A stretch of DNA of 64,000 bases from Eutreptiella sp. 'Long Island Sound 2002' (Eukaryota; Protista; Euglenida): assembly GCA_964036045.1 (NCBI GenBank), contig OZ038378.1:16244001-16308000 (forward strand), in the 5' to 3' direction. A program made the position numbers and the translations under genes. Shown here one piece after another: positions 1 to 42,390 of this stretch. The notes under the pieces were generated by a model, which ran no database searches, had not been told where the DNA came from, and saw only the letters and a list, made by a program, of their open reading frames with translations. How positions within the stretch are numbered: the stretch's first letter is position 1; each line of letters opens with the position of its first letter.

Positions 1-3000
1 CACCGCAGGAGTCATGTTATTTAAGGGGCCACAGGCAAGGCGGTACACACAGAACGCGGTGCCCACACAAGGCGGTGCACAAAAAAGGCAGCCTGTGGCC
101 ACCGCAGGAGTCATGTTATTTAAGGGGCAACAGGCAAGGCGGTACACACAGAACGCGGTGCCTACACAAGGCGGTGCACACAAAAGGCGGCCTGTGGCCA
201 CCGCAGGAGTCATGTTATTTCAGGGGCCACAGGCAAGGCGGTACACACAGAAGGCGGTGCCTACACAAGGCGGTGCACACAAAAGGCGGCCTGTGGCCAC
301 CGCAGGAGTCATGTTATTTCAGGGGCCACAGGCAAGGCGGTACACACAGAAGGCGGTGCCCACACAAGGCGGTGCACACAAAAGGCGGCTTATGGCCACC
401 GCAGGAGTCATGTTATTTAAGGGGCCACAGGCAAGGTGGTACACACAGAAGGCGGTGCCCACACAAGGCGGTGCAGACAACAGGCGGCCTGTGGCCACCG
501 CAGGAGTCGTGTTATGTAAGGGACCACAAGCAAGGCGGTGCACGTAGAACGCGGTGCACACAAAAGGCGGCCTGTGGCCACCGCAGGTGTCATGTTATTT
601 TAGGGGCCACAGGCAAGGCGGTACACACAGAAGGCGGTGCCTACACAAGGCGGTGCACACAAAAGGCGGCCTGTGGCCACCGCAGGAGTCATGTTATTTA
701 AGGGGCCACAGGCAAGGCGGTCCACACAGAAGGCGGTGCCTACACAAGGCGGTGCACACAAAAGGCGGCCTGTGGCCACCGCAGGAGTCATGTTATTTAA
801 GGGGCCACAGGCAAGGCGGTACACACAGAACGCGGTGCCCACACAAGGCGGTGCACACAAAAGGCGGCCTGTGGCCACCGCAGGAGTCATGTTATTTCAG
901 GGGCCACAGGCAAGGCGGTACACACAGAACGCGGTGCCTACACAAGGCGGTGCACACAAAAGGCGGCCTGTGGCCACCGCAGGAGTCATGTTATTTCAGG
1001 GGCCACAGGCAAGGCGGTACACACAGAAGGCGGTGCCCACACAAGGCGGTGCACACAAAAGGCGGCCTATGGCCACCGCAGGAGTCATGTTATTTAAGGG
1101 GCAACAGGCAAGGCGGTACACACAGAAGGCGGTGCACACAAAAGGCGGCCTGTGGCCACCGCAGGAGTCATGTTATTTAAGGGGCCATAGGCAAGGCGGT
1201 GCACATAGAACGCGGTGCACACAAAAGGCGGCCTGTGGCCACCGCAGGAGTCATGTTATTTAAGGAGCCACAGGCAAGGCGGTACACACAGAAGGCGGTG
1301 CCTACACAAGGCGGTGCACACAAAAGGCGGCCTGGGGCCACCGCAGGAGTCATGTTATTTCAGGGGCCACAGGCAAGGCGGTACACACAGATGGCGGTGC
1401 CCACACAAGGCGGTGCACACAAAAGGCGGCCTATGGCCACCGCAGGAGTCATGTTATTTCAGGGGCCACAGGCAAGGCGGTACACACAGAAGGCGGTGCC
1501 CACACAAGGCGGTGCACACAAAAGGCGGCCTGTGGCCACCGCAGGAGTCATGTTATTTAAGGGGCCACAGGCAAGGCGGTACACACAGATGGCGGTGCCC
1601 ACACAAGGCGGTGCACACAAAAGGCGGCCTATGGCCACCGCAGGAGTCATGTTATTTAAGGGGCCACAGACAAGGCGGTGCACATAGAACGCGGTGCACA
1701 CAAAAGGCAGCCTGTGGCCACCGCAGGAGTCATGTTATTTAAGGAGCCACAGGCAAGGCGGTACACACAGAAGGCGGTGCCCACACAAGGCGGTGCACAC
1801 AAAAGGCGGCCTGTGGCCACCGCAGGAGTCATGTTATTTCAGGGGCCACAGGCAAGGCGGTACACACATAAGGCGGTGCCTACACAAGGCGGTGCACACA
1901 AAAGGCGGCCTGTGGCCACCGCAGGAGTCATGTTATTTCAGGGGCCACAGGCAAGGCGGTACACACAGAAGGCGGTGCCCACACAAGGCGGTGCACACAA
2001 AAGGCGGCCTATGGCCACCGCAGGAGTCATGTTATTTAAGGGGCAACAGGCAAGGTGGTACACACAGAAGGCGGTGCCCACACAAGGCGGTGCACACAAA
2101 AGGCGGCCTGTGGCCACCGCAGGAGTCATGTTATTTAAGGGGCCACAGGCAAGGTGGTACACACAGAAGGCGGTGCCTACACAAGGCGGTGCAGACAACA
2201 GGCGGCCTGTGGCCACCGCAGAAGTCGTGTTATTTAAGGGACCACAGGCAAGGCGGTGCACGTAGAACGCGGTGCACACAAAAGGCGGCCTGTGGCCACC
2301 GCAGGAGTCATGTTATTTTAGGGGCCACAGGCAAGGCGGTACACACAGAAGGCGGTGCCTACACAAGGCGGTGCACACAAAAGGCGGCCTGTGGCCACCG
2401 CAGGAGTCATGTTATTTAAGGGGCCACAGGCAAGGCGGTCCACACAGAAGGCGGTGCCTACACAAGGCGGTGCAGACAAAAGGCGGCCTGTGGCCACCGC
2501 AGGAGTCATGTTATTTAAGGGGCCACAGGCAAGGCGGTACACACAGAAGGCGGTGCCCACACAAGGCGGTGCACACAAAAGGCGGCCTGTGGCCACCGCA
2601 GGAGTCATGTTATTTCAGGGGCCACAAGCAAGGCGGTACACACAGAACGCGGTGCCCACACAAGGCGGTGCACAAAAAAGGCAGCCTGTGGCCACCGCAG
2701 GAGTCATGTTATTTCAGGGGCCACAGGCAAGGCGGTACACACAGAAGGCGGTGCCTACACAAGGCGGTGCACACAAAAGGCGGCCTGTGGCCACCGCAGG
2801 AGTCATGTTATTTCAGGGGCCCCAGGCAAGGCGGTACACACAGAAGGCGGTGCCCACACGAGGCGGTGCACACAAAAGGCGGCCTGTGGCCACCGCAGGA
2901 GTCATGTTATTTAAGGGGCCACAGGCAAGGCGGTGCACATAGAACGCGGTGCACACAAAAGGCAGCCTGTGGCCACCGCAGGAGTCATGTTATTTAAGGA

Positions 3001-5742
3001 GCCACAGGCAAGGCGGTACACACAGAAGGCTGTGCCCACACAAGGCGGTGCACACAAAAGGCGGCCTGTGGCCACCGCAGGAGTCATGTTATTTCAGGGG
3101 CCACAGGCAAGGCGGTACACACATAAGGCGGTGCCTACACAAGGCGGTGCACACAAAAGGCGGCCTGTGGCCACCGCAGGAGTCATGTTATTTCAGGGGC
3201 CACAGGCAAGGCGGTACACACAGAAGGCGGTGCCCACACAAGGCGGTGCACACAAAAGGCGGCCTATGGCCACCGCAGGAGTCATGTTATTTAAGGGGCC
3301 ACAGGCAAGGTGGTACACACAGAAGGCGGTGCCTACACAAGGCGGTGCAGACAACAGGCGGCCTGTGGCCACCGCAGAAGTCGTGTTATTTAAGGGACCA
3401 CAGGCAAGGCGGTGCACGTAGAACGCGGTGCACACAAAAGGCGGCCTGTGGCCACCGCAGGAGTCATGTTATTTTAGGGGCCACAGGCAAGGCGGTACAC
3501 ACAGAAGGCGGTGCCTACACAAGGCGGTGCACACAAAAGGCGGCCTGTGGCCACCGCAGGAGTCATGTTATTTAAGGGGCCACAGGCAAGGCGGTCCACA
3601 CAGAAGGCGGTGCCTACACAAGGCGGTGCAGACAAAAGGCGGCCTGTGGCCACCGCAGGAGTCATGTTATTTAAGGGGCCACAGGCAAGGCGGTACACAC
3701 AGAAGGCGGTGCCCACACAAGGCGGTGCACACAAAAGGCGGCCTATGGCCACCGCAGGAGTCATGTTATTTCAGGGGCCACAAGCAAGGCGGTACACACA
3801 GAACGCGGTGCCCGCACAAGGCGGTGCACAAAAAAGGCAGCCTGTGGCCACCGCAGGAGTCATGTTATTTCAGGGGCCACAGGCAAGGCGGTACACACAG
3901 AAGGCGGTGCCTACACAAGGCGGTGCACACAAAAGGCGGCCTGTGGCCACCGCAGGAGTCATGTTATTTCAGGGGCCACAGGCAAGGCGGTACACACAGA
4001 AGGCGGTGCCCACACAAGGCGGTGCACACAAAAGGCGGCCTGTGGCCACCGCAGGAGTCATGTTATTTAAGGGGCCACAGGCAAGGCGGTGCACATAGAA
4101 CGCGGTGCACACAAAAGGCGGCCTGTGGCCACCGCAGGAGTCATGTTATTTAAGGAGCCACAGGCAAGGCGGTACACACAGAAGGCGGTGCCTACACAAG
4201 GCGGTGCACACGAAAGGCGGCCTGGGGCCACCGCAGGAGTCATGTTATTTCAAAGGCCACAGGCAAGGCGGTACACACAGAACGCGGTGCCCACACAAGG
4301 CGGTGCACACAAAAGGCGGCCTGTGGCCACCGCAGGAGTCATGTTATTTCAGGGGCCACAAGCAAGGCGGTACACACAGAACGCGGTGCCCACACAAGGC
4401 GGTGCACAAAAAAGGCAGCCTGTGGCCACCGCAGGAGTCATGTTATTTCAGGGGCCACAGGCAAGGCGGTACACACAGAAGGCGGTGCCTACACAAGGCG
4501 GTGCACACAAAAGGCGGCCTGTGGCCACCGCAGGAGTCATGTTATTTCAGGGGCCACAGGCAAGGCGGTACACACAGAAGGCGGTGCCCACACAAGGCGG
4601 TGCACACAAAAGGCGGCCTGTGGCCACCGCAGGAGTCATGTTATTTAAGGGGCCACAGGCAAGGCGGTGCACATAGAACGCGGTGCACACAAAAGGCGGC
4701 CTGTGGCCACCGCAGGAGTCATGTTATTTAAGGAGCCACAGGCAAGGCGGTACACACAGAAGGCGGTGCCTACACAAGGCGGTGCACACGAAAGGCGGCC
4801 TGGGGCCACCGCAGGAGTCATGTTATTTCAAAGGCCACAGGCAAGGCGGTACACACAGAAGGCGGTGCCCACACAAGGCGGTGCACACAAAAGGCGGCCT
4901 ATGGCCACCGCAGGAGTCATGTTATTTAAGGGGCCACAGGCAAGGCGGTACACACAGAAGGCGGTGCCCACACAAGGCGGTGCACACAAAAGGCAGCCTG
5001 TGGCCACCGCAGGAGTCATGTTATTTAAGGGGCCACAGGCAAGGCGGTGCACATAGAACGCGGTGCACACAAAAGGCGGCCTGTGGCCACCGCAGGAGTC
5101 ATGTTATTTAAGGAGCCACAGGCAAGGCGGTACACACAGAAGGCGGTGCCTACACAAGGCGGTGCACACGAAAGGTGGCCTGGGGCCACCGCAGGAGTCA
5201 TGTTATTTCAAAGGCCACAGGCAAGGCGGTGCACACAGAAGGCGGTGCCTACACAAGGCGGTGCACACAAAAGGCGGCTTGTGGCCACCGCAGGAGTCAT
5301 GTTATTTAAGGAGCCACAGGCAAGGCGGTACACACAGAAGGCGGTGCCTACACAAGGTGGTGCACACGAAAGGCGGCCTGTGGCCACCGCAGGAGTCATG
5401 TTATTTAAGGGGCCACAGGCAAGGTGGTACACACAGAAGGCGGTGCCCACACAAGGCGGTGCAGACAACAGGCGGCCTGTGGCCACCGCAGGAGTCGTGT
5501 TATTTAAGGGGCCACAGGCAAGGGGGTGCACGTAGAACGCGGTGCACACAAAAGGCGGCCTGTGGCCACCGCAGGAGTCATGTTATTTTAGGGGCCACAG
5601 GCAAGGCGGTACACACAGAAGGCGGTGCCTACACAAGGCGGTGCACACAAAAGGCGGCCTGTGGCCACCGCAGGAGTCATGTTATCTCAGGGGCCACAGG
5701 CAAGGCGGTACACACATAACGCGGTGCGCACAAAAGGCGGCC
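1..5742. repeat. Tandem satellite, 99-bp monomer with interspersed 83-bp variant monomers; runs off the left edge
   Basis: Consensus GCCTGTGGCCACCGCAGGAGTCATGTTATTT(A/C)AGGGGCCACAGGCAAGGCGGTACACACAGAAGGCGGTGCC(C/T)ACACAAGGCGGTGCACACAAAAGGCG repeats continuously. The 33-aa periodicity of the ORFs confirms 99 bp. Short monomers lack one 16-bp subunit. Confidence 0.97.
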
Positions 5743-5930
5743 GGCGGTTTGGCCGGCCGATTTCGGCCGGCCGGCTGGCCGGCCGAACCGCCGGAACCTA
5801 CCCGGCCGGCGGTGTCGGCCAAATTTTCGGCCGAAATCCTCAACGGCGGTCTCGGCCGGCCGATTTCGGCCGGCCGGACCGCCGCCGAGTTTTTCGGCCG
5901 AGGACCGCCGCCGAGCCCCACCGCCGTTTC
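5743..5930. repeat. GC-rich palindromic cassette (CGGCCG cluster) abutting the satellite
   Basis: Hairpin GGCCGGCCGA-TT-TCGGCCGG(CC) at about 5751 and again at about 5854, perfect palindrome TTTCGGCCGAAA at about 5825-5836, and many CGGCCG sites. Confidence 0.7.
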
Positions 5931-7159
5931 ATTCCGATGAGCTCCACCCCTGGTTTATTTAGCTTTTCTGCCCACTCCAGTCCCACGTTTTTCGTCCTTT
6001 CCCCAATCCCTCCCATTTTTCTTGCCAATTTCAGTCATGTCTTCCACTCACTACTCACTGAATTGGAGCCTTTGCTGAATTACATCCTATTGCTATTTTT
6101 GTTGCCTTGTGTTCTTTCACACATATGGATATCCATATCGCAATACTTCAAGGGAGAACCAGAGCACATGCACTGGACCTAAAAGGTGATACTTTTCCAA
6201 AGTCATGGCGGGTGGGAAGACCATGGCAGAGACCAACACACACACCGGAACCAAAGTTTTGTCGCTAGCCCAGTAACCCATTGCAATTCGCTCAAAAGTC
6301 TTGTGACAACATACCTTTTTAAGAATGTGGTGAAACATGGTCAATTGTCGGTATTGTGTGGCTCTTGTTGGCTTGCAGAGCTAGTTCACCGCCATGGTGG
6401 CTAGTATGGATGGGTGCTGACCCATTGCAACGATCAAGTTGAGGTTCTCTATGAAATATTTTGCAAATGGGTCGGTACATGGCAATACTGTGTTGTATAA
6501 TATGTGTCCCGTTGTATAACATGTGTCCCGTTTATGTCCCATGTGTCCGATTGTATCCTGAAAAAATTTCTACTGTATCCCAATGTATCCCACAAGGCGG
6601 GGGTGGTGCGCCAGTCCTTGTATGTGAAGCCCCCCCCCCCCCCGACCCCCTCCCCCAAAGGTTTTGAGAGATAATGGTTTTGGTGGTGTGTGGAGTGTGG
6701 CCGTGGTTGGTCTCATCCGGCCCGGCAAATTTTTTCTTGACCCTAAATAGTGAGGCTATAGAACTAACAAGTACCTAGGGCAGTTGTGTAGGGTGTGGGC
6801 GTTTGTGGTTTTCTTGCTTCTCTTTGTGTTCTCTTTGTACATCTTAGTGACACATCATGAGTAACAAGGCGAAGAGCCCTTCGCACACTTTGGACATTGA
6901 TTGTTCGCAGCCGTGCCCAAGCCGGCTTTCGTTGCCCTTCGCTTGGCAACGCCCATGACACCCATACCTCGTCGGTGCCCCCTCATTCAAGATCATTCAA
7001 GACCGTTCCAGATTATCCTATTCTTTTGGTTAGGGGTGGTGCGTGAGTCAAGCTATGTGGTCCGCATACCCAACTGTTCGGAGGTGCTACACCCCCCATC
7101 CCACCCCCCCAAGCCCCCCCCCCCCCCCTCCGGGTGGCCACTCGACGATGGTAGAGAGG

Positions 7160-34745: not shown

Positions 34746-37046
34746 AGGGGGCTCTATCAACCCCCCCGAACGTTGTCACTTCAAAGAGGTTTTTTTTCAA
34801 CCGGCTTCTACCAAGCATTCCAAAACAGCCCTTCCATAACATTTTCAGATGTGTTGTCAGACTTTTGCCAGCTTTCTACCTCAACTTCAGAGCTTAAATG
34901 CCAAAGAGGTCAAGAGAGGTGCGCTTCAGAACGGATTGATATTTTATTCATGATCGCTTGTAAGGTATTTTTGCCATTTTTGCGTGCCTCTTTTTTTGTT
35001 GGGAGTGTCACAAGTCCAAAAAGCAAGTGGACTCTATTCATTGGGGCCTTTCAAATGGAATTTATTGCAGTCTTTGCACAATAAGTTAGAATCATGTTGC
35101 TTGGCGGTAGGAGCATCAACTCTTTTCCTTTCCACGAAAGGTATCTTCATAATTCACATTGGTTGATCATGGTAAACCATGCAACAATTGGGGCGAATGT
35201 CTAGTCAAGCCTCTAATGCTCCAAAAATGCAATTTTTGTCCCCTTTTTTTAGTAGTCTTGCACCAACAATTGGGGCCATATGTTGGAAAAAACTTTTTGT
35301 GTTTTTGCTCCCGAGGAGCAGGGGGGTGGTGCTCATCAAGAGCACAAGTGCTCTTGAGGAGCAGGGGCGGTGCTCCCTAGAAGCCTTTGTTCGTGAGGAG
35401 CAAGGGTCGGTGCCCTTAGGATCTCCATCAGGGTCGGAGCTCCTCAAGAGCCAGGGGCAGTGCTCCTCAGGAGCAGGAGCCAAGAGCGGCTCTTGTCAGG
35501 AGCAGCCATCTCCCACCACCCGGGCGCTCTCATATCAAGTATTTCTGAAATACTCAATCCTTCAAACTTCAATGTCCCCTGTTCCATGCCCCCCTAGTTG
35601 GTTCTCAGCAAAAAGACGCCTACAAAAATGGTTCAGCACAGGCGCTTTCGTTACTTGCAAACGCTGAAATCCGGTAAAATCCCGCAAATCCAATCGCTCA
35701 ACCAAAAAAAAAAACCAGAGCAGATTCACAGCGGTGCGCTATACCTTGGTCTACTCAGCTGCTACGGGGAGTTTGCCTCATATTTCAGTTACCATCTCGG
35801 TTGGGGCCCCTCCCCCAGTCTGACTAGCAGGTTACCGCGGCCCTGCCGGGGCGAGGGGAAAAAGGTTTGAGGGGTCTGGAAAATTCACTGTGCGGAAGGG
35901 CAGCCGTATCTCAATTCCGCACTGCCCCTTGATCCCCCCCCCCCCCATGTCCACAGCCGCCTTGTGAGAATGAGCCTTCAGAATGACAGCTGATACAGCC
36001 GCGGCAGCAACCACCGTGTATTAACTCTTAAGATGGCATGAACGGGCGGAACAAATATGACACCATCTCCAACAACACTTCCTGGCGGGACAGCACAAGA
36101 GAAACACACCTTTTCCAAGTTTTTAACCAAGTTGATTCCACCCAAATTTGTCCCTGGCGGAAGCGGAAATATTTTTGCGCGGGGAGCGGAAATATTTTTG
36201 CGCGGGGAGCCGGAATTGGCCTGGGGTGGTTGAAAAATTGCAATTTCCAGGCGACCTCCAACAACCCCTGGAGACCTTTGGGCCGGGGTTGGGTGATCAT
36301 TTGGTGACAATGGGAGTACATTCAAACCCATGGAGAGCCATGTAGCACCAATTAGGCCCTGCTAGTGGGTTGGTGTATTGGCCCCCGAAAGTGCTGTTTT
36401 GGGCCTGTTTGCAGCGTGGTGGGAAAAACTTGTTTGTGGGGTCTTGAATGGGAGGTCATCCCAGATTTGGGGCGCTTGACCCAAAGGTGGCTGTTGCACA
36501 GGTGTATGGGGCTTTGGAGGCAGGGTTGCCCAAGAGGGGATGAAAGCAGCCCAAGGCAGTGGTGTTTGGGCTGCAACCGGCAGCTGAGGACACAATGGAG
36601 GTTGAGCAGGGGCCGGAGGACGAGTTCGGGAAGGTGCTGGGCGCCATGGAGCACCGCATGGACAGGGGCTGTGATATGTCTGTGCTCATTGCAGAACCAT
36701 TCCAATTCCGTGTTCTAAAAGCATTCTAATTGTAAAACGCTTCCAAAAAGCGTCGGCGGTTGCATGCACGTGCTGGATGTTGAGAGCAACATGTGCGACG
36801 CCATGGGCGTCCAAGTGTGGGTCCACCGGCCGACCGTGGTCTCCTTGGGGGCGTTGTGGGTGCGCATGCGTGTGAGCCCCATTCCCTGAGTTCCCCGAGG
36901 TCTGGTCCAAGGCCTATAGGCGTTCACGTCTTCCAGCCATGGGACGGGTGGATCAGCATTGAGCAGGAGTCATTGGCTGAACTCGTGCAAGCATCACCTC
37001 CTGGTGCGTGCGGTGTTGTGGTCCAATCAAGGCTAGAAACCAGGGT

Positions 37047-37078
37047 AAACGTTTCTTCCGTCTATTTTTTTTGTCGAG
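37047..37078 (+). promoter_or_regulatory. Putative trans-splice acceptor overlapping a relic spliced-leader-like sequence
   Basis: AAACGTTTCTTCCGTCTATTTTTTTTGTCG-AG lies 5 nt before the ATG. It resembles the euglenid SL as recalled from memory ((AC)ACTTTCTGAGTGTCTATTTTTTTTCG). Confidence 0.55.
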
Positions 37079-37083
37079 GCAAA

Positions 37084-40000
37084 ATGGCAAAGCATGGCCG
37101 ACGAGCAGAAAGCTTGGTGGACCTCAAGGAGAGACCAGCGCTAGAACGCAAGCCTTCAGTCGCACTACGCCCCATCACATTCGAGGCTGTAGCTTTCTCG
37201 GTCCATGGCGTGTTCGCAGAGACAAGAGAATTGCGTAAGACTGCATTCAAGGCGACATTGGATGATTATTTGTTGCGCCGCCAGAGCAAATACTATGAAC
37301 CATTCTTTGAATTCGAAGAGTCCGAATATGTGAGACTTATTGCTGGCCTTGGCACATACGATGGGATCCGGACGTTCTTGGCCTCCCGCAACATCACCAT
37401 TGCCGATGGTAAGCCTGATGATACCCCCCATGAAGAAACTGTCTGCGGCCTGGGAAACAAGGCCGACCGCAAATTTCATGATGCCATTGAGGATTCCAAT
37501 AGCCTCGCAGCCCCAAAGTCCACCTTGGCCCTGGTCCAGAATCTGAAGGATAAGGGCATCCGCGTTGGAGTTGTGTGCATGACGAATAATGCTGATTTTA
37601 TCTTGAAAGAGGTTGGGGCGCGTGACGCACCAGACTGTCTCTTGGACCCCTCAGTGGCTGACGCAAAGGGTCTGAAACCCTTTCCTGAGCCAGACTACTG
37701 GAAGAAGGTGGCGGATGCATTGGGCACTACCCCTGCCAAGCTTGTGGTCGTTGGGGGCTCCATCCCTGCGATGCAAGCAGCCCAGAAAGCAGGGGTTGCT
37801 CTGGCCGTTGCGGTGTCGCCTATTAAGAGCATTTGGAGTATTCTGAAGCAGTCTGGGGCAAATGTGGCGATCAAAAGCTTCGAGGGGTTCGATACTGCCG
37901 AGCACCTGCAGCGATGGGTTGATGCCAGCAATCGCGATGAAGACGGCGTGGTTGCCAACCGTGCAGAAATCCTGCAGCACTACCGCCGCCAAACGATGTG
38001 TGACGTCAAAATATCGGAGCTGTTCTCTCTTGAGCAGGAATGGTGTATTGTGGAGGATGAGTATGTCGAAAAGTTGCATCAGCTCAAGGAGACCATTTTC
38101 TGTTTGGGCAATGGTTTCATTGCAATGCGAGGCAACTTTGAGGAAGGCTTCCATGGGGCCCTGGGCGATTCGGTACCGGGAACTTACATGAATGGCTTCT
38201 ACGAGTCGTCGCCCATCAGGTACGCAGAGGCAGCATATGGGTATCCGGAAAAGCATCAGACCATGCTCAATGTCACCAATGCCCGCAAGCTGGATGTCTA
38301 CATATCTGACTGTGAAAGGGATGACCCCGTGGGACTGTTTGCAGGAGAGTACAGAGCCTACCGCCGTGTGCTGAACATGCAGGACGGAACTGTGACGCGG
38401 TCCTTTACATGGATGGACCACGAGCAGCGGGAGGTGGATGTCCAAACCACACATCTGGTGTCTTTTGAAAACAAGAATGTTGCTGTGATGAAGTACAGCC
38501 TGACCCCTCAGTTCGATGGCACGATGACATTTACCAGCTACGTGGACGGCGCAGTCTCGAACGTCATCACCAAGAGCGACCCTCGTGTAGGATCCGCCCT
38601 TCCTGGACCCACGCTTCAAGTCATCAACAAGGTACAGGAGGACAATGGGAAATTTGGGGCGGTTGTGCAGAGAACAACATACTCCAATCTGTTGCTTGCT
38701 TGCTGCGTGCAGCACGTCCTGCAGACCGCCAGCGAGCACAAGCTGATCCCCGTCATCAACGAACAAAATGTGGAGGTCACGTTCCAAGTTGAGGCTCAAA
38801 GCGGAGTCCCTATCACTTTATACAAGTACATCTCTTATTTCAATTCTCGCGACATCACGGATACGACGCAGCTTTTGAAAGAGGCCCGCCTCAGTGCAAT
38901 TGCAGCTGCAGAAGCCGGTTTGGAGACCCACATCAAAAAGCAGTCGGATTACTTGCAGAAGTTCTGGGATCAGTCGAGCGTGACTATTGAGGGTGACCCC
39001 AGCCTGCAGCAGGGAGTTCGCTTCAACATGTTCCATCTGCTGCAATCGGTGGGGCGCGATGGGAAGACCAATATTGGCGCTAAGGGGCTGTCAGGCGAAG
39101 GCTACGAGGGGCACTACTTCTGGGACACAGAAATCTACATCTTTCCGTTCTTCTTGTACACCATGCCTGAGATTTGCCGTTCCCTGCTGGAGTACCGCTA
39201 TTCGTGTCTGGACCACGCCCGGGCACGCGCTAAGGAGCTCGATCACAAAGGCGCATTGTACCCCTGGAGAACTATTATGGGGGATGAGGCGTCTGCCTAC
39301 TTCCCCGCCGGGACTGCCCAGTACCACATCAACGCAGATATCATCTACTCACTCAAGAGGTACGTCGAAGCCACGGACGACATGACTTTCCTGTTGCAAA
39401 TGGGAGCAGAAATGTTGTTCGAGACCGCCAGGTTTTGGGTGGACATCGGCAATTTTCGTGCAAGTGATGACTGCTTTGTCATCAATATGGTGACGGGCCC
39501 AGACGAGTACACGGCACTGGTCAACAACAATTGCTTCACAAATCTGATGGCCCAGAACAATCTGCAGTACGCTGTCGAGGTTGCGAAGAAAATGAAGGCT
39601 GAGCACATTCCAGATTGGAACAGACTCACAAAAGCGTTGAATCTGGAGCAATCTGAGGTTGATGAATGGGCCAAGGCCGCTGCGAAGATGTTTTTGCCCT
39701 ATGACGACCGACTCAAAATTTATTTGCAGGATGACTCATTCCTTCAAAAGAAGCGTTGGGACATCCAGGAGACTCCACGTGAAAAGTTCCCACTGCTCTT
39801 GAATTTCCATCCACTGTCCATCTACCGCTACCAGGTATGCAAACAGGCAGACCTCCTGCTTGCGGAGTTCCTCCTCGGCGAACGCTTCTCCATCGACCAG
39901 AAGCGCCGCGATTTCGAGTATTATGACGGTCTAACCACGCACGACTCCTCATTGTCGGCGTGCATCTTTGCGATCCTTGCTGCTGAGCTCGGCCACCATG

Positions 40001-40356
40001 ACAAAGCATACCACCACTTCGCTCAGACCGCGCGCATGGACCTGGACAACCACCACCACAACACGCAGCACGGGATCCACACTGCTTGCATGGCAGGCAC
40101 ATGGTTGAGTCTGACAGGGGGCTTTGCCGGCATGCGGACATACAATGGAAAGCTGAGTTTCTCGCCGTGGCTGCCAGACAAGTGGGAGGGATACTCCTTC
40201 AATATTGTATTCAAGGGCTCCGCGATCAATGTCAGCATTTCGAAGGACACTGTCACGTACAAACTGAAGAGTGGCAAGGGCCTTAGCTTTACGCACCGCG
40301 ACAATGCAGTGGTGCTGTCAACGGATGCCCCCAGTGTCTCCCGCTCGCTGAAATAA
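37084..40356 (+). CDS. Intronless fusion: degenerate beta-phosphoglucomutase-family HAD domain + GH65 glycoside phosphorylase (trehalose/maltose/kojibiose phosphorylase type), 1090 aa
   Basis: GH65 motifs ETIFCLGNG..MRGNFEEG, YEGHYFWDTEIY, YPWRTI.G.E.S, GTAQYHINAD, catalytic GPDEY, KQAD and phosphate-site HDSSLS. The N-terminal YDGIRTFLASRNI...G.PDD.P..ETVCGLGN matches the beta-PGM-family HAD cap. Start moved from the ORF-track 36793 to AAAATGG at 37084. Confidence 0.93.
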   Translation: MAKHGRRAESLVDLKERPALERKPSVALRPITFEAVAFSVHGVFAETRELRKTAFKATLDDYLLRRQSKYYEPFFEFEESEYVRLIAGLGTYDGIRTFLASRNITIADGKPDDTPHEETVCGLGNKADRKFHDAIEDSNSLAAPKSTLALVQNLKDKGIRVGVVCMTNNADFILKEVGARDAPDCLLDPSVADAKGLKPFPEPDYWKKVADALGTTPAKLVVVGGSIPAMQAAQKAGVALAVAVSPIKSIWSILKQSGANVAIKSFEGFDTAEHLQRWVDASNRDEDGVVANRAEILQHYRRQTMCDVKISELFSLEQEWCIVEDEYVEKLHQLKETIFCLGNGFIAMRGNFEEGFHGALGDSVPGTYMNGFYESSPIRYAEAAYGYPEKHQTMLNVTNARKLDVYISDCERDDPVGLFAGEYRAYRRVLNMQDGTVTRSFTWMDHEQREVDVQTTHLVSFENKNVAVMKYSLTPQFDGTMTFTSYVDGAVSNVITKSDPRVGSALPGPTLQVINKVQEDNGKFGAVVQRTTYSNLLLACCVQHVLQTASEHKLIPVINEQNVEVTFQVEAQSGVPITLYKYISYFNSRDITDTTQLLKEARLSAIAAAEAGLETHIKKQSDYLQKFWDQSSVTIEGDPSLQQGVRFNMFHLLQSVGRDGKTNIGAKGLSGEGYEGHYFWDTEIYIFPFFLYTMPEICRSLLEYRYSCLDHARARAKELDHKGALYPWRTIMGDEASAYFPAGTAQYHINADIIYSLKRYVEATDDMTFLLQMGAEMLFETARFWVDIGNFRASDDCFVINMVTGPDEYTALVNNNCFTNLMAQNNLQYAVEVAKKMKAEHIPDWNRLTKALNLEQSEVDEWAKAAAKMFLPYDDRLKIYLQDDSFLQKKRWDIQETPREKFPLLLNFHPLSIYRYQVCKQADLLLAEFLLGERFSIDQKRRDFEYYDGLTTHDSSLSACIFAILAAELGHHDKAYHHFAQTARMDLDNHHHNTQHGIHTACMAGTWLSLTGGFAGMRTYNGKLSFSPWLPDKWEGYSFNIVFKGSAINVSISKDTVTYKLKSGKGLSFTHRDNAVVLSTDAPSVSRSLK

Positions 40357-42390
40357 ACCTGTGAGGCGCTCTTCGCTTTTGACTTGGGCCCATGAGGGGC
40401 TGTGACCCAGCCTGCTCATAAAGGAGTCAATGTCTGCACAAACAGTCAGCAACCTGCATGATTCATTCCTGTGCAATGCAGCAGGAGCTCATAAGGTGTT
40501 ACGAGTAAATCCACATGAAGGCACTGCATTTAATGCAGTGGTCTGCTGCGTCTCGTGTGAACAGGAGACAGACCCTCCACCAGCCTCTTGGTCACTTTTG
40601 CAAGAGGCGTAGCGCACACACGTGTGCTTGGAGGAGATGAAAGATTGGTGTAGTGTGCGAATGCCCCTGCTACGTGCGTGTGTGGCTGTGTGTGTGTGTG
40701 TGTGTGGGTGGGTGGGTGGGTGGGTGTGTGTGTTCCCGTGGGCATCTGTCAATCCTGTCAGTAGCCCCTCCCACATCCTGAGGCATCGTGGTCCTGAACA
40801 GAACCGTACATGAAGAAAGCAGATGACTGAAACCAAGACCAAGCCCCTGTTCCGCCCTTTCAAGCGCACCCTCCACCCACAGCTATTGCAGCTGATCAGC
40901 GTTCTGGGAATTATGGGGGGCATCAATGAGCTGCAATGGGGCATTCAAGCAGCATGTTGAGCCACGCGGGGGCGTGCACCAATGGGGGCATGATCACCAC
41001 TGCGCCTACTGCACGCACTCCCATGTGCCACTATCTGCTGCTGTTCAGATCTTAGCAGGAACCAGCTGCATCACATGTCCAACTCAGTTGGATCCGGCTC
41101 CTTCTGATCCGTTGCCCTGGCAAACGCCACTGGCCGGTTTGTACACAGGAAATGTATTTGTGGGCATAAAGCTCTCGCAGCTTTGCATGTTTCCGACATG
41201 GTACAGGGAATTCATAGTGAAGCCCTGATACCCCCTGCAGGACTCCGTTTGACCCCATCTGCTGTCCCCTGATGGCCTAACCCTTCCTTTCCTCCCCACT
41301 GTGTGTCTGTGTGTGCACCTGTTTCCATGTTCCAAAAACAAAATTTCGTCCACTTAACTCTCCTGAAGCATTCGCATACAGCCCCACATATGAGCCAAGT
41401 GACCCTGTCCTCCAGGACAGGGGGCCGCTGGGGCATTTTGCAGGGAGCGATGTATGCATGCATCAGTGCACATGCATGTATGCTAATACGTGGTGATGAT
41501 GCAGTGCAAGTGTTGGTACGTTTAGTGCAGATGTGTGCAAGTCAGTGCCACAGCACCTCGGCATTTGCATGTGAACCAAAGGCCCATCTGTATGCTTGCG
41601 TCTGCTTTGGTGGCTGGACGGGAGGGTTACAGGGAGGGTCACACCGCTGCAAGTTTTTTGATTCTTACCTCACTGAGTGTGTCGCCCCTGGTGACCTGGT
41701 GACCCAAAGCTCGATGAGCAGGGAGTGCTATGACCCATGGGTGCAGCAGGGGAATTAGACATTGACGCATTTTCTGACCATACAGTCAGCAACAAACGGC
41801 TTTTCAGACCATGACACTGAACGCATATGCCAACTCTTGAGCCGGATAAGGCACTAGACATAGATCACCAGGCTCCCTACACCACCGAGAGCAATGAAAT
41901 GTTGTGAAAGCTTGATGGAGCTGATTGACAACAAACCAAAAGTGTGCAAAAGCCGTTCTGAAAGCGGTTGTAAACCCCATGTTCTAATTTCTAAATTCTG
42001 AAACTGCTTGCTTTCTGAGAATTCCGCTTACAATGATTGAATTTTATTCTCATAGCTATGCAGGGTGAGGCCAGGTTTGAGTCATTGATGGCTCGCCATG
42101 TTAAGTTCCATTTGGATAGGCAGCTGTTGGTACTGGGGACAACACTTATCAATCAGAAGCACCAAGCACTCATGCCTCCGGGATTTTCTAAGTGTCTGTT
42201 TCTTGATCCGGGATTTTTTAAGTGTCCGTTTCTTGAGGGTGTCATTTTTGCTGCTATGTAGAGGCTCCATGGAGGATATTGCTAGCAGGTGACGCCGATT
42301 TGCTCATCTGAGCTGCCTCTTGGGCTATCAATGCAAGACCACCATAAACAGACTGCTGCTAGTAGCACACAAAAGCAGCAGGATGCTCCG

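What the first reader, a model, noticed from the sequence alone, without database searches (positions are those of the whole stretch)
37084..37950. Dead beta-phosphoglucomutase domain fused to an intact GH65 phosphorylase
Seen: HAD motif I FDxDG reads FSVHG (both Asp lost), motif II SSSKN reads CMTNN and motif IV ED reads GG. The cap sequence (YDGI..FLASRNI...ETVCGLGN) is well kept, and all GH65 catalytic and phosphate motifs are intact. Established: inverting GH65 phosphorylases release beta-glucose-1-phosphate, which beta-PGM converts. The two genes are often adjacent or fused in bacteria, and Euglena is the classic source of trehalose phosphorylase activity. Inference: a bacterial enzyme pair was fused and the mutase repurposed as a pseudo-enzyme module, possibly a sugar-phosphate sensor, regulator or oligomerisation domain. 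I do not know of this being described.
Basis: partly seen in the sequence, partly recalled or inferred. Interest (0 to 1): 0.8.

Follow-up and report, generated by a model that had tools for sequence, protein, structure and literature searches.

The report
Dead mutase domain on trehalose phosphorylase
This euglenid alga's likely trehalose-splitting enzyme carries, at its front end, a well-folded copy of the partner enzyme beta-phosphoglucomutase that has lost almost every catalytic residue, yet has been kept by selection in three euglenid lineages.

Summary
Window 37084-40356 (+) is one intronless ORF of 1090 aa. It is expressed and spliced-leader trans-spliced.

- **Dead HAD domain.** Residues about 31-280 are a beta-phosphoglucomutase (bPGM)-type HAD domain of the Rv3400 kind. 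In L. lactis numbering it reads D8S, D10H, H20R, R49T, K76A, S114C, S116T, K117N, K145F, E169G, D170G.
- **Intact GH65.** Residues 319-1080 are an intact GH65 phosphorylase with the trehalose-phosphorylase signature (W-R and S-A-Y).
- **Old inactivation.** Two other euglenid lineages have the same fusion. All three share K145F, seen in no other of 190 related domains. The other motifs are lost in different combinations.
- **Not decaying neutrally.** dN is 0.46-0.71 in the HAD domain, 1.25-3.9 in the adjacent linker and 0.26-0.32 in GH65. AlphaFold gives pLDDT 92.7 for the domain.
- **Sensor idea weak.** The canonical ligand-binding residues are not conserved among the three lineages. I favour a structural or regulatory module.
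- **Origin only partly as proposed.** The GH65 module nests among stand-alone bacterial enzymes. The HAD resembles a different fusion family and the euglenids' own active bPGM. The fusion was probably assembled in euglenids.

I found no description of this in the searchable literature. I rate it a new variant of a known kind, of moderate interest.

The parts
37047..37078 (+). Spliced-leader-like relic (T-rich tract) that ends in the AG trans-splice acceptor at 37077-37078. The mature 5' UTR is only 5 nt.
   Evidence: Sequence read. RNA contigs begin at 37078 with the loose end ATTTTTTTTC. JGI transcript L005 begins TTTTTTTTCG|GCAAAATG.
37084..37173 (+). N-terminal tail, aa 1-30, predicted disordered. 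It carries a conserved HGRRA motif and a basic-x-S/T site (RKPS here; RRGT and RRKS in the orthologues).
   Evidence: pLDDT is under 50 for residues 1-28. Identity to the orthologues is 41-59%, as high as or higher than in the HAD domain.
37174..37923 (+). Catalytically dead bPGM-type HAD domain (aa 31-280), Rv3400 subfamily.
   Evidence: Pfam and NCBIfam hits. 8h5s at E 7e-21. AF2 pLDDT 92.7. Foldseek to 8h5s at E 2.8e-22, TM 0.79/0.86. Residue table.
37195..37209 (+). Remnant of HAD motif I, FSVHG. The nucleophile Asp is replaced by Ser39 and the general acid/base Asp by His41.
37345..37476 (+). Cap with the Rv3400-type insert (aa 88-131). It is the best-conserved part of the domain, although the phosphate-binding R49 and K76 equivalents are Thr91 and Ala127.
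   Evidence: Alignments. Residue table. Shared-residue list.
37576..37590 (+). Remnant of HAD motif II, CMTNN (aa 165-169).
37681..37683 (+). Motif III Lys replaced by Phe200. This change is shared by all three euglenid lineages.
   Evidence: K145F occurs in none of the other domains aligned.
37753..37758 (+). Motif IV Glu-Asp (the Mg2+ ligands) replaced by Gly224-Gly225.
37924..38037 (+). Fast-evolving linker (aa 281-318) between the HAD and GH65 modules.
   Evidence: Identity among orthologues is 9-23% and dN is 1.25-3.9. pLDDT is under 50 for residues 285-312.
38038..40356 (+). Intact GH65 phosphorylase module (aa 319-1090) plus the stop codon. It carries the general acid E808 (39505-39507) and the trehalose-phosphorylase signature W728-R729 and S737-A738-Y739 (39292-39300).
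   Evidence: Pfam 1.7e-125, 2.2e-56 and 5.2e-20. 1h54 at E 2e-116 with a printed alignment. Motif definitions from PMC11442529. Conservation among orthologues.

Best explanation
**What the gene is.** It encodes the euglenid inverting trehalose phosphorylase: a GH65 enzyme that converts trehalose + Pi to glucose + beta-glucose-1-phosphate. The sequence signature is shown here; the activity is inferred.

**What the N-terminal domain is.** It descends from an Rv3400-type bPGM. It was already inactive in the common ancestor of three euglenid lineages (shared Lys145->Phe). It then lost the remaining catalytic and phosphate-binding residues lineage by lineage. In this genome nearly all are gone.

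**Why it is not a decaying vestige.** It still folds as a bPGM. It evolves two to three times slower than the neighbouring linker. It has almost no indels.

**Most likely role.** The canonical ligand-binding residues are not conserved among the orthologues. The cap insert, the core and the disordered N-terminal tail with a basic-x-Ser/Thr site are conserved. I therefore infer that it is a non-catalytic structural or regulatory module. It may set quaternary structure, dock a partner or carry phospho-regulation. It is tethered to the phosphorylase by a flexible linker.

**Where the mutase step goes.** It is done by separate active bPGM genes. This is shown for the sister lineage, which has both genes in one assembly, and inferred for this genome.

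**Origin.** The fusion was most likely assembled in the euglenid lineage from two separately acquired bacterial-type genes.
For: - **Domain identity and dead motifs:**
- **Fold kept:** AF2 pLDDT 92.7, pTM 0.88. Foldseek top hit is 8h5s, TM 0.79/0.86.
- **Orthologues:** P0015 and P0016 share the architecture and K145F. K145F is absent from all other domains among the 190 aligned. The three fused HADs form one clade, SH-aLRT 99.
- **Constraint:** identity is 38-45% in HAD, 9-23% in the linker and 64-69% in GH65. NG86 dN is 0.46-0.71 in HAD, 1.25-3.9 in the linker and 0.26-0.32 in GH65, with dS saturated at 1.7-2.7.
- **Expression:** full-length, collinear, SL-capped RNA contigs are found in cultures and in 4 metatranscriptome studies.
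- **GH65 intact with TP signature:**
- **Independent origin of the modules:**
- **Active bPGM in the sister euglenid assembly:**
- **Flexible linker and disordered tail:**
Against: - No biochemical data exist for this protein.
- Only three orthologue lineages were found, so dS is saturated and dN/dS is only bounded.
- Family-conserved catalytic positions are not lost significantly more often than other conserved positions (4/13 against 25/43, Fisher p 0.12). The whole domain has relaxed, not just the active site.
- P0015 still keeps D10, T16, H20, R49, K76, S114 and S116, so ligand binding in that lineage is not excluded.
- The structural or regulatory role and the phospho-site are inferences from conservation alone.
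- I could not show an active bPGM gene in this genome itself (searches were uninformative).
- The position of the fused-HAD clade relative to the bacterial and euglenid active bPGMs is unresolved because of long branches.
Confidence: 0.65

Rival explanations
1. The dead domain is an allosteric sensor. It still binds beta-G1P, G6P or beta-glucose-1,6-bisphosphate in the old cleft and tunes the phosphorylase.
For: The cap, including the family-specific insert, is the best-kept part. Orthologue P0015 keeps D10, T16, H20, R49, K76, S114 and S116, and so resembles a nucleophile-less substrate trap. The domain is under constraint.
Against: In the window protein both phosphate sites are dismantled (R49T, K76A, S114C, S116T, K117N, K145F, E169G, D170G). 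The three orthologues keep different subsets. The only universally shared active-site change puts a Phe where the phosphate-neutralising Lys was.
Confidence: 0.15
2. The domain is a neutral vestige. It is retained only because in-frame deletion is rare, and it has no function of its own.
For: It evolves about twice as fast as the GH65 module and sits on long branches. Loss of conserved residues is not restricted to catalytic positions.
Against: - It has been retained as an open frame with almost no indels in three lineages, even though the adjacent linker has diverged to 9-23% identity.
- dN is 2-3 times lower than in the linker.
- AF2 predicts the fold confidently.
- One lineage even carries two such domains in tandem.
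Confidence: 0.12
3. The domain keeps some catalytic activity (mutase, phosphatase or other) through non-canonical residues.
For: Orthologue P0016 keeps both motif I aspartates and P0015 keeps the second one.
Against: The window protein lacks the nucleophile, the acid/base, the Lys and both Mg2+ ligands. P0016 lacks the Lys and both Mg2+ ligands. P0015 lacks the nucleophile and the Lys. No HAD phosphotransferase chemistry is known without the nucleophile Asp (established knowledge of the HAD superfamily).
Confidence: 0.03
4. Alternative origin: the whole HAD-GH65 fusion was acquired ready-made from an unsampled bacterium and merely decayed in euglenids.
For: N-terminal Rv3400-type HAD-GH65 fusions are common in bacteria. 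Two of them (P0281, P0289) have a GH65 inside the trehalose-phosphorylase-like superclade.
Against: The euglenid GH65 clade nests (SH-aLRT 99) among stand-alone GH65s. None of the 117 nearest bacterial GH65 hits has an N-terminal HAD: 103 stand alone and 14 carry a C-terminal L. lactis-type bPGM. P0015's HAD is 43.7% identical to the active bPGM of its own genome, against 39.3% to the best bacterial fusion.
Confidence: 0.15

Closest known systems
Rv3400 beta-phosphoglucomutase of Mycobacterium tuberculosis (PDB 8h5s) and L. lactis bPGM (1lvh, 1o08 and others)
   Same: Same fold and the same C1 cap with the Rv3400-type insert. It is the best sequence match (E 7e-21) and the best structural match (TM 0.79/0.86).
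   Different: All four HAD motifs and the cap phosphate binders are replaced. The score lies far below the NCBIfam bPGM cut-offs. The domain is fused to GH65 rather than free-standing.
Bacterial N-terminal bPGM-GH65 fusions (P0002-P0006 type, about 1045 aa; mycobacterial 1343-aa bPGM-GH65-trehalose-phosphatase-like proteins such as P0007, which I recall as OtsB1/Rv2006-like)
   Same: Same domain order, and the HAD belongs to the same subfamily (33-38% identity).
   Different: Their HAD motifs are intact. Full-length identity to the window protein is only 26-29%, and their GH65 forms a distant clade.
Bacterial trehalose-phosphorylase-like GH65 enzymes, stand-alone or with a C-terminal L. lactis-type bPGM (for example P0017 Halanaerocella, P0031 Vulcanibacillus)
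   Same: The GH65 module is 50-55% identical and nests among them. It has the same W-R and S-A-Y trehalose-phosphorylase signature and catalytic residues.
   Different: They have no N-terminal HAD. Where a bPGM is fused, it is C-terminal, of another subfamily, and catalytically intact.
Non-catalytic HAD-like (TPP-like) domains in trehalose-6-phosphate synthase families of plants and yeast (from my own knowledge; PMC6630311 cites Vandesteene et al. 2010 on regulatory TPS-like proteins)
   Same: These are also enzymes of trehalose metabolism that carry a degenerate HAD-type partner-enzyme domain kept as a non-catalytic module.
   Different: They belong to a different HAD subfamily (TPP, not bPGM), have a different catalytic partner (GT20, not GH65), and are on the synthetic rather than the degradative side. 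This comparison was not tested here.

Membership tests
HAD superfamily / beta-phosphoglucomutase (EC 5.4.2.6) | Rossmann-like HAD core plus C1 helical cap fold | tested here: met
   AF2 pLDDT 92.7. Foldseek top hits are all bPGMs, with 8h5s at TM 0.79/0.86.
HAD superfamily / beta-phosphoglucomutase (EC 5.4.2.6) | Motif I DxD (nucleophile Asp8 and acid/base Asp10) | tested here: not met
   The positions are Ser39 and His41.
HAD superfamily / beta-phosphoglucomutase (EC 5.4.2.6) | Motif II Ser/Thr (S114) and the S116-K117-N118 phosphate loop | tested here: not met
   The positions are Cys165, Thr167, Asn168 and Asn169.
HAD superfamily / beta-phosphoglucomutase (EC 5.4.2.6) | Motif III Lys (K145) | tested here: not met
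   The position is Phe200, also Phe in both orthologue lineages.
HAD superfamily / beta-phosphoglucomutase (EC 5.4.2.6) | Motif IV acidic pair (E169, D170) that binds Mg2+ | tested here: not met
   The positions are Gly224-Gly225.
HAD superfamily / beta-phosphoglucomutase (EC 5.4.2.6) | Cap residues that bind the distal phosphate (R49, K76) and His20 | tested here: not met
   The positions are Thr91, Ala127 and Arg51.
HAD superfamily / beta-phosphoglucomutase (EC 5.4.2.6) | Curated family score cut-off (TIGR01990 bPGM, TIGR02009 subfamily) | tested here: not met
   40.5 bits against a 189.4 cut-off, and 66.8 bits against 153.35.
GH65 inverting alpha-glucoside phosphorylases | N-terminal beta-sandwich, (alpha/alpha)6 catalytic domain and C-terminal domain | tested here: met
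   PF03636, PF03632 and PF03633 are all far above their cut-offs. 1h54 matches at E 2e-116 over the full length.
GH65 inverting alpha-glucoside phosphorylases | General acid Glu (LbMP E487) and -1 subsite W-D and K-Q | tested here: met
   E808 in TGPDEY, W680-D681 and K920-Q921. All are invariant in the three orthologues.
GH65 inverting alpha-glucoside phosphorylases | Phosphate-site Ser pair (H-x-S-S-L-S) as in phosphorylases | tested here: met
   HDSSLS at 953-958 aligns with HESSLS of 1h54. The role of these residues is from my own knowledge of LbMP.
GH65 inverting alpha-glucoside phosphorylases | Trehalose-phosphorylase +1 subsite signature (SAY in place of the maltose phosphorylase HNE; W-R of the WRA motif) | tested here: met
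   S737-A738-Y739 aligns with H-N-E of 1h54, and W728-R729 is present. Motif definitions come from PMC11442529. One orthologue has SAF.
GH65 inverting alpha-glucoside phosphorylases | Pi-dependent trehalose cleavage that gives beta-G1P | not testable with these tools
   Activity is known for Euglena extracts (PMC4336185), but it is not linked to this gene in any paper I could search.
Bacterial N-terminal bPGM-GH65 fusion proteins | N-terminal Rv3400-type HAD followed by GH65 | tested here: met
Bacterial N-terminal bPGM-GH65 fusion proteins | GH65 module of the same subfamily as in those fusions | tested here: not met
   Full-length identity is 26-29%. The euglenid GH65 falls in a separate clade among stand-alone GH65s.

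The most novel reading that the evidence does not exclude
The dead bPGM domain and the conserved, disordered N-terminal tail (HGRRA and a basic-x-Ser/Thr site) together form a switch on a eukaryotic GH65 phosphorylase. The switch would be driven by phosphorylation or by a metabolite. Through it the cell would gate trehalose breakdown during osmotic stress. This would be a pseudoenzyme regulator built from the pathway's own next enzyme.
Probability: 0.2. Interest if true: 0.7.

Novelty: new variant of a known kind. Interest (0 to 1): 0.5.

Why it matters
- **A gene for a classic activity.** Euglena's trehalose phosphorylase activity has been used as a biocatalyst for decades. Yet the reviews I could read list no sequence for it, and one states that all characterised eukaryotic GH65 members are hydrolases (PMC11442529, PMC4336185). 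This gene is a strong candidate for that enzyme. If its activity is confirmed, it would be a eukaryotic GH65 phosphorylase.
- **A clean natural case of pseudoenzyme evolution.** The downstream enzyme of a pathway was fused to the upstream one, lost catalysis early through one shared Lys->Phe change, and was then kept for another role. Meanwhile the catalytic job went to separate gene copies.
- **A practical point.** Constructs for biocatalysis could be tested with and without the first 318 residues.

Tried and rejected
- **More orthologues.** Word searches with the HAD region, the GH65 region and a three-sequence alignment, plus the exhaustive representative search, found only three euglenid lineages. 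A dense orthologue test was therefore not possible.
- **dN/dS within the P0015 cluster.** Members differ by only 1-3 residues, which is too few.
- **dS between lineages.** It is saturated or undefined. I used the linker as an internal near-neutral yardstick instead.
- **Preferential loss at catalytic positions.** The test was not significant (4/13 against 25/43, Fisher p 0.12). I do not claim that the active site alone was released.
- **Active bPGM in the window's own organism.** The metagenome scan returned only bacterial-type loci of 65% identity or less, and none from that organism's JGI samples. The findings index gave nothing. Both results are uninformative.
- **Tandem Repeats Finder on L004.** It found nothing because the unit (756 nt) exceeds its period limit. 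The repeat finder resolved the array.
- **Papers.** The Rv3400 structure paper (PMC10949319) is not held. The supplement of the Euglena dark-proteome paper is not held. I therefore could not tell which protein its 'beta-phosphoglucomutase' is.
- **Longer annotated N-terminus.** I rejected the 1166-aa version in a public annotation (P0009). The mRNA is trans-spliced 6 nt before ATG 37084.
Full report
**The gene and its transcript.** Between 33 and 42 kb the window holds one long ORF, 36793-40356 on the + strand. Its translation contains a Met at 37084 that starts a 1090-aa protein.

RNA evidence fixes that start. Transcript contigs from a culture data set and from two estuary metatranscriptome runs lie collinear on 37078-40500. 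They show no differences and no joints, and they carry a loose 5' end ATTTTTTTTC. A JGI transcript of the same protein begins TTTTTTTTCG followed by GCAAAATG. This has four consequences:
- The gene is expressed.
- The gene is intronless.
- The mRNA is spliced-leader trans-spliced at the AG at 37077-78.
- ATG 37084 is the first ATG of the mRNA.

The 1166-aa version in a public annotation (P0009) is therefore too long. The spliced leader identifies the organism as a euglenid. The species name is coded in the tools.

**Check of the observation.** Pfam finds a HAD hydrolase domain at about aa 46-241 and the three GH65 domains at 324-1078. NCBIfam's best HAD model is the bPGM family, but the scores are far under its cut-offs. 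The closest solved structure to the N-terminal part is Rv3400 bPGM, 8h5s, at E 7e-21.

I built a profile alignment of 190 domains of this subfamily and anchored it to L. lactis numbering through. The window protein reads as follows.

| L. lactis position | Window residue |
|---|---|
| D8 | S39 |
| D10 | H41 |
| H20 | R51 |
| R49 | T91 |
| K76 | A127 |
| S114 | C165 |
| S116 | T167 |
| K117 | N168 |
| K145 | F200 |
| E169 | G224 |
| D170 | G225 |

Kept are G11, T16, G46 and N118.

The GH65 part aligns end to end with maltose phosphorylase 1h54 at E 2e-116. It keeps the general acid (E808), the -1 subsite W-D and K-Q, and the HDSSLS phosphate site. At the position of the maltose phosphorylase H-N-E motif it has S-A-Y, preceded by W-R. 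The 2024 GH65 review gives these as the trehalose phosphorylase pattern.

**Fold.** With a 20-sequence alignment AlphaFold2 predicts the domain at pLDDT 92.7 and pTM 0.88. Foldseek's best hits are all bPGMs, led by 8h5s (E 2.8e-22, TM 0.79/0.86). In the full-length model (pLDDT 81, pTM 0.70) residues 1-28 and the 285-312 linker fall under pLDDT 50. The domain is therefore tethered flexibly and its orientation on GH65 is not defined.

**Orthologues.** Searches found two further lineages with the same architecture.
- P0015 is 1094 aa, from MMETSP transcripts and one genome assembly.
- P0016 is 1226 aa, from a JGI transcript.

Both are euglenid, because their transcripts start with the spliced-leader tail. 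The P0015 gene is intronless in its genome too.

| Lineage | Lost | Kept |
|---|---|---|
| P0015 | D8A, K117S, N118S, K145F, E169D, D170E | D10, T16, H20, R49, K76, S114, S116 |
| P0016 | T16V, H20S, K76Q, S116M, K145F, E169G, D170G | D8, D10, R49 |

K145F is common to all three lineages and occurs in no other of the 190 domains. The three fused HADs form one clade (SH-aLRT 99) on long branches. The simplest reading is one fusion and one early inactivation by Lys->Phe, followed by lineage-specific erosion.

**Is it decaying neutrally?** No.

| Region | Identity among the three | NG86 dN |
|---|---|---|
| N-terminal tail | 41-59% | 0.49-0.77 |
| HAD domain | 38-45% (249 of 250 positions aligned without gaps) | 0.46-0.71 |
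| Linker | 9-23% | 1.25-3.9 |
| GH65 | 64-69% | 0.26-0.32 |

Identities are and dN values. dS is saturated at 1.7-2.7. The domain therefore evolves about twice as fast as the enzyme but two to three times slower than the linker, which runs at about the synonymous rate.

One caveat applies. Family-conserved catalytic positions are not lost significantly more than other conserved positions (4/13 against 25/43, Fisher p 0.12).

**What does it do?**
- The residues that bind the two phosphates of the substrate are not conserved among the three proteins. The shared change also puts a hydrophobic Phe at the phosphate-neutralising Lys. This argues against a conserved sugar-phosphate sensor that uses the old site, at least in this genome.
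- Conserved are the hydrophobic core, the Rv3400-type cap insert, and a set of clade-specific residues (for example F75, F200, W206). The disordered N-terminal tail is also conserved, with HGRRA and a basic-x-Ser/Thr site just before strand 1: RKPS here, RRGT and RRKS in the others.
- I infer a non-catalytic structural or regulatory module. The phosphorylation idea is a hypothesis drawn from motif conservation only.

**Origin.** The two modules have different nearest relatives.
- **GH65.** The GH65 clade nests (SH-aLRT 99) among stand-alone bacterial GH65s of 50-55% identity. Of the 117 nearest bacterial hits, 103 are stand-alone, 14 carry a C-terminal L. lactis-type bPGM, and none has an N-terminal HAD.
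- **HAD.** The HAD is closest (33-38%) to the N-terminal HADs of a bacterial fusion family. Those proteins are only 26-28% identical to the window protein overall, and their GH65 forms a distant clade.
- **Euglenid active bPGM.** The genome assembly that holds P0015 also holds active-looking bPGM units of the same subfamily (P0141, all motifs intact). P0015's dead HAD is 43.7% identical to them, against 39.3% to the best bacterial fusion. A single clade of all euglenid HADs is not rejected (p-AU 0.75).

I therefore think the fusion was assembled in euglenids, possibly from a duplicate of their own bPGM. This is not resolved.

**Literature.** Reviews describe trehalose phosphorylase activity from Euglena gracilis and its use in synthesis, but give no sequence (PMC4336185; PMC11442529). 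The GH65 review states that all characterised eukaryotic GH65 members are hydrolases. Searches for Euglena with GH65, with bPGM, or with trehalose and phosphorylase, and for bPGM with GH65 and fusion, found no description of this protein or of a dead bPGM domain. A 2025 proteome paper reports a 'beta-phosphoglucomutase' that accumulates in dark-grown E. gracilis, but I could not see which protein it is.

**Verdict.** 'Pseudo-enzyme module kept by selection' holds. 'Sensor' is weak. 'Inherited bacterial pair' is probably wrong in detail. I rate it a new variant of a known kind, since bPGM-GH65 fusions and non-catalytic HAD domains in trehalose enzymes are both known. Interest is moderate.

Noticed in passing
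L004:5001-12616 (ENA assembly ERZ25074135, contig ctg6686; the same assembly as the P0015 orthologue in L001): At least 10 head-to-tail units of 756/762 nt (252/254 codons), 96-100% identical. Each encodes a bPGM, nearly all with the catalytic motifs intact (two units carry a single motif II change). They run as long ORFs (871, 1021 and more than 1773 aa) that continue off the locus. Two spacings (746 and 755/761 nt) break the frame. It looks like a bPGM polyprotein or tandem gene array in a euglenid.
   Followed up: partly
L003:139-900 (JGI transcript that encodes P0016): Upstream of the 1226-aa ORF lies a second bPGM-like HAD domain. Its motif I reads FEVEG, its Lys is kept, and its motif IV reads E-A. 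The run of 10 N that separates it from the main ORF is flanked by the same 9 bases (ctgcgaacg), so it is a scaffold joint between overlapping ends. Collapsing the joint puts both parts in one frame. That lineage therefore probably makes a HAD-HAD-GH65 protein of about 1460 aa.
   Followed up: partly
window 37047-37083: The DNA just before the start codon resembles the 3' half of the euglenid spliced leader (TTTCT..GTCTATTTTTTTT.CG). RNA contigs show that today's trans-splice acceptor is the AG at its very end (37077-78). This fits the retrogene reading of the scan's note s1-228115. The orthologue in L001 is also intronless but has no such relic upstream of its acceptor.
   Followed up: partly
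P0227, P0284, P0155, P0237 and P0280 (representative-search hits, bacterial-type HAD domains): A few metagenomic bPGM-type domains also carry substitutions at single or several catalytic positions. For example, P0284 has R49P, K76Q and K145N, and P0227 has D10N and K145I. Degenerate bPGM domains may therefore exist sporadically in bacteria too. Sequencing error is not excluded.
   Followed up: no
window 1-6000: There is a strong strand asymmetry here (AT skew 0.28-0.35 at about 60% GC), unlike the rest of the window. I did not examine it.
   Followed up: no
window 36900-40500, public runs: Near-identical full-length transcripts of this gene occur in four estuary metatranscriptome studies as well as in culture data sets. 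Either the organism or a very close relative lives in estuaries, or its RNA was added to those samples.
   Followed up: no
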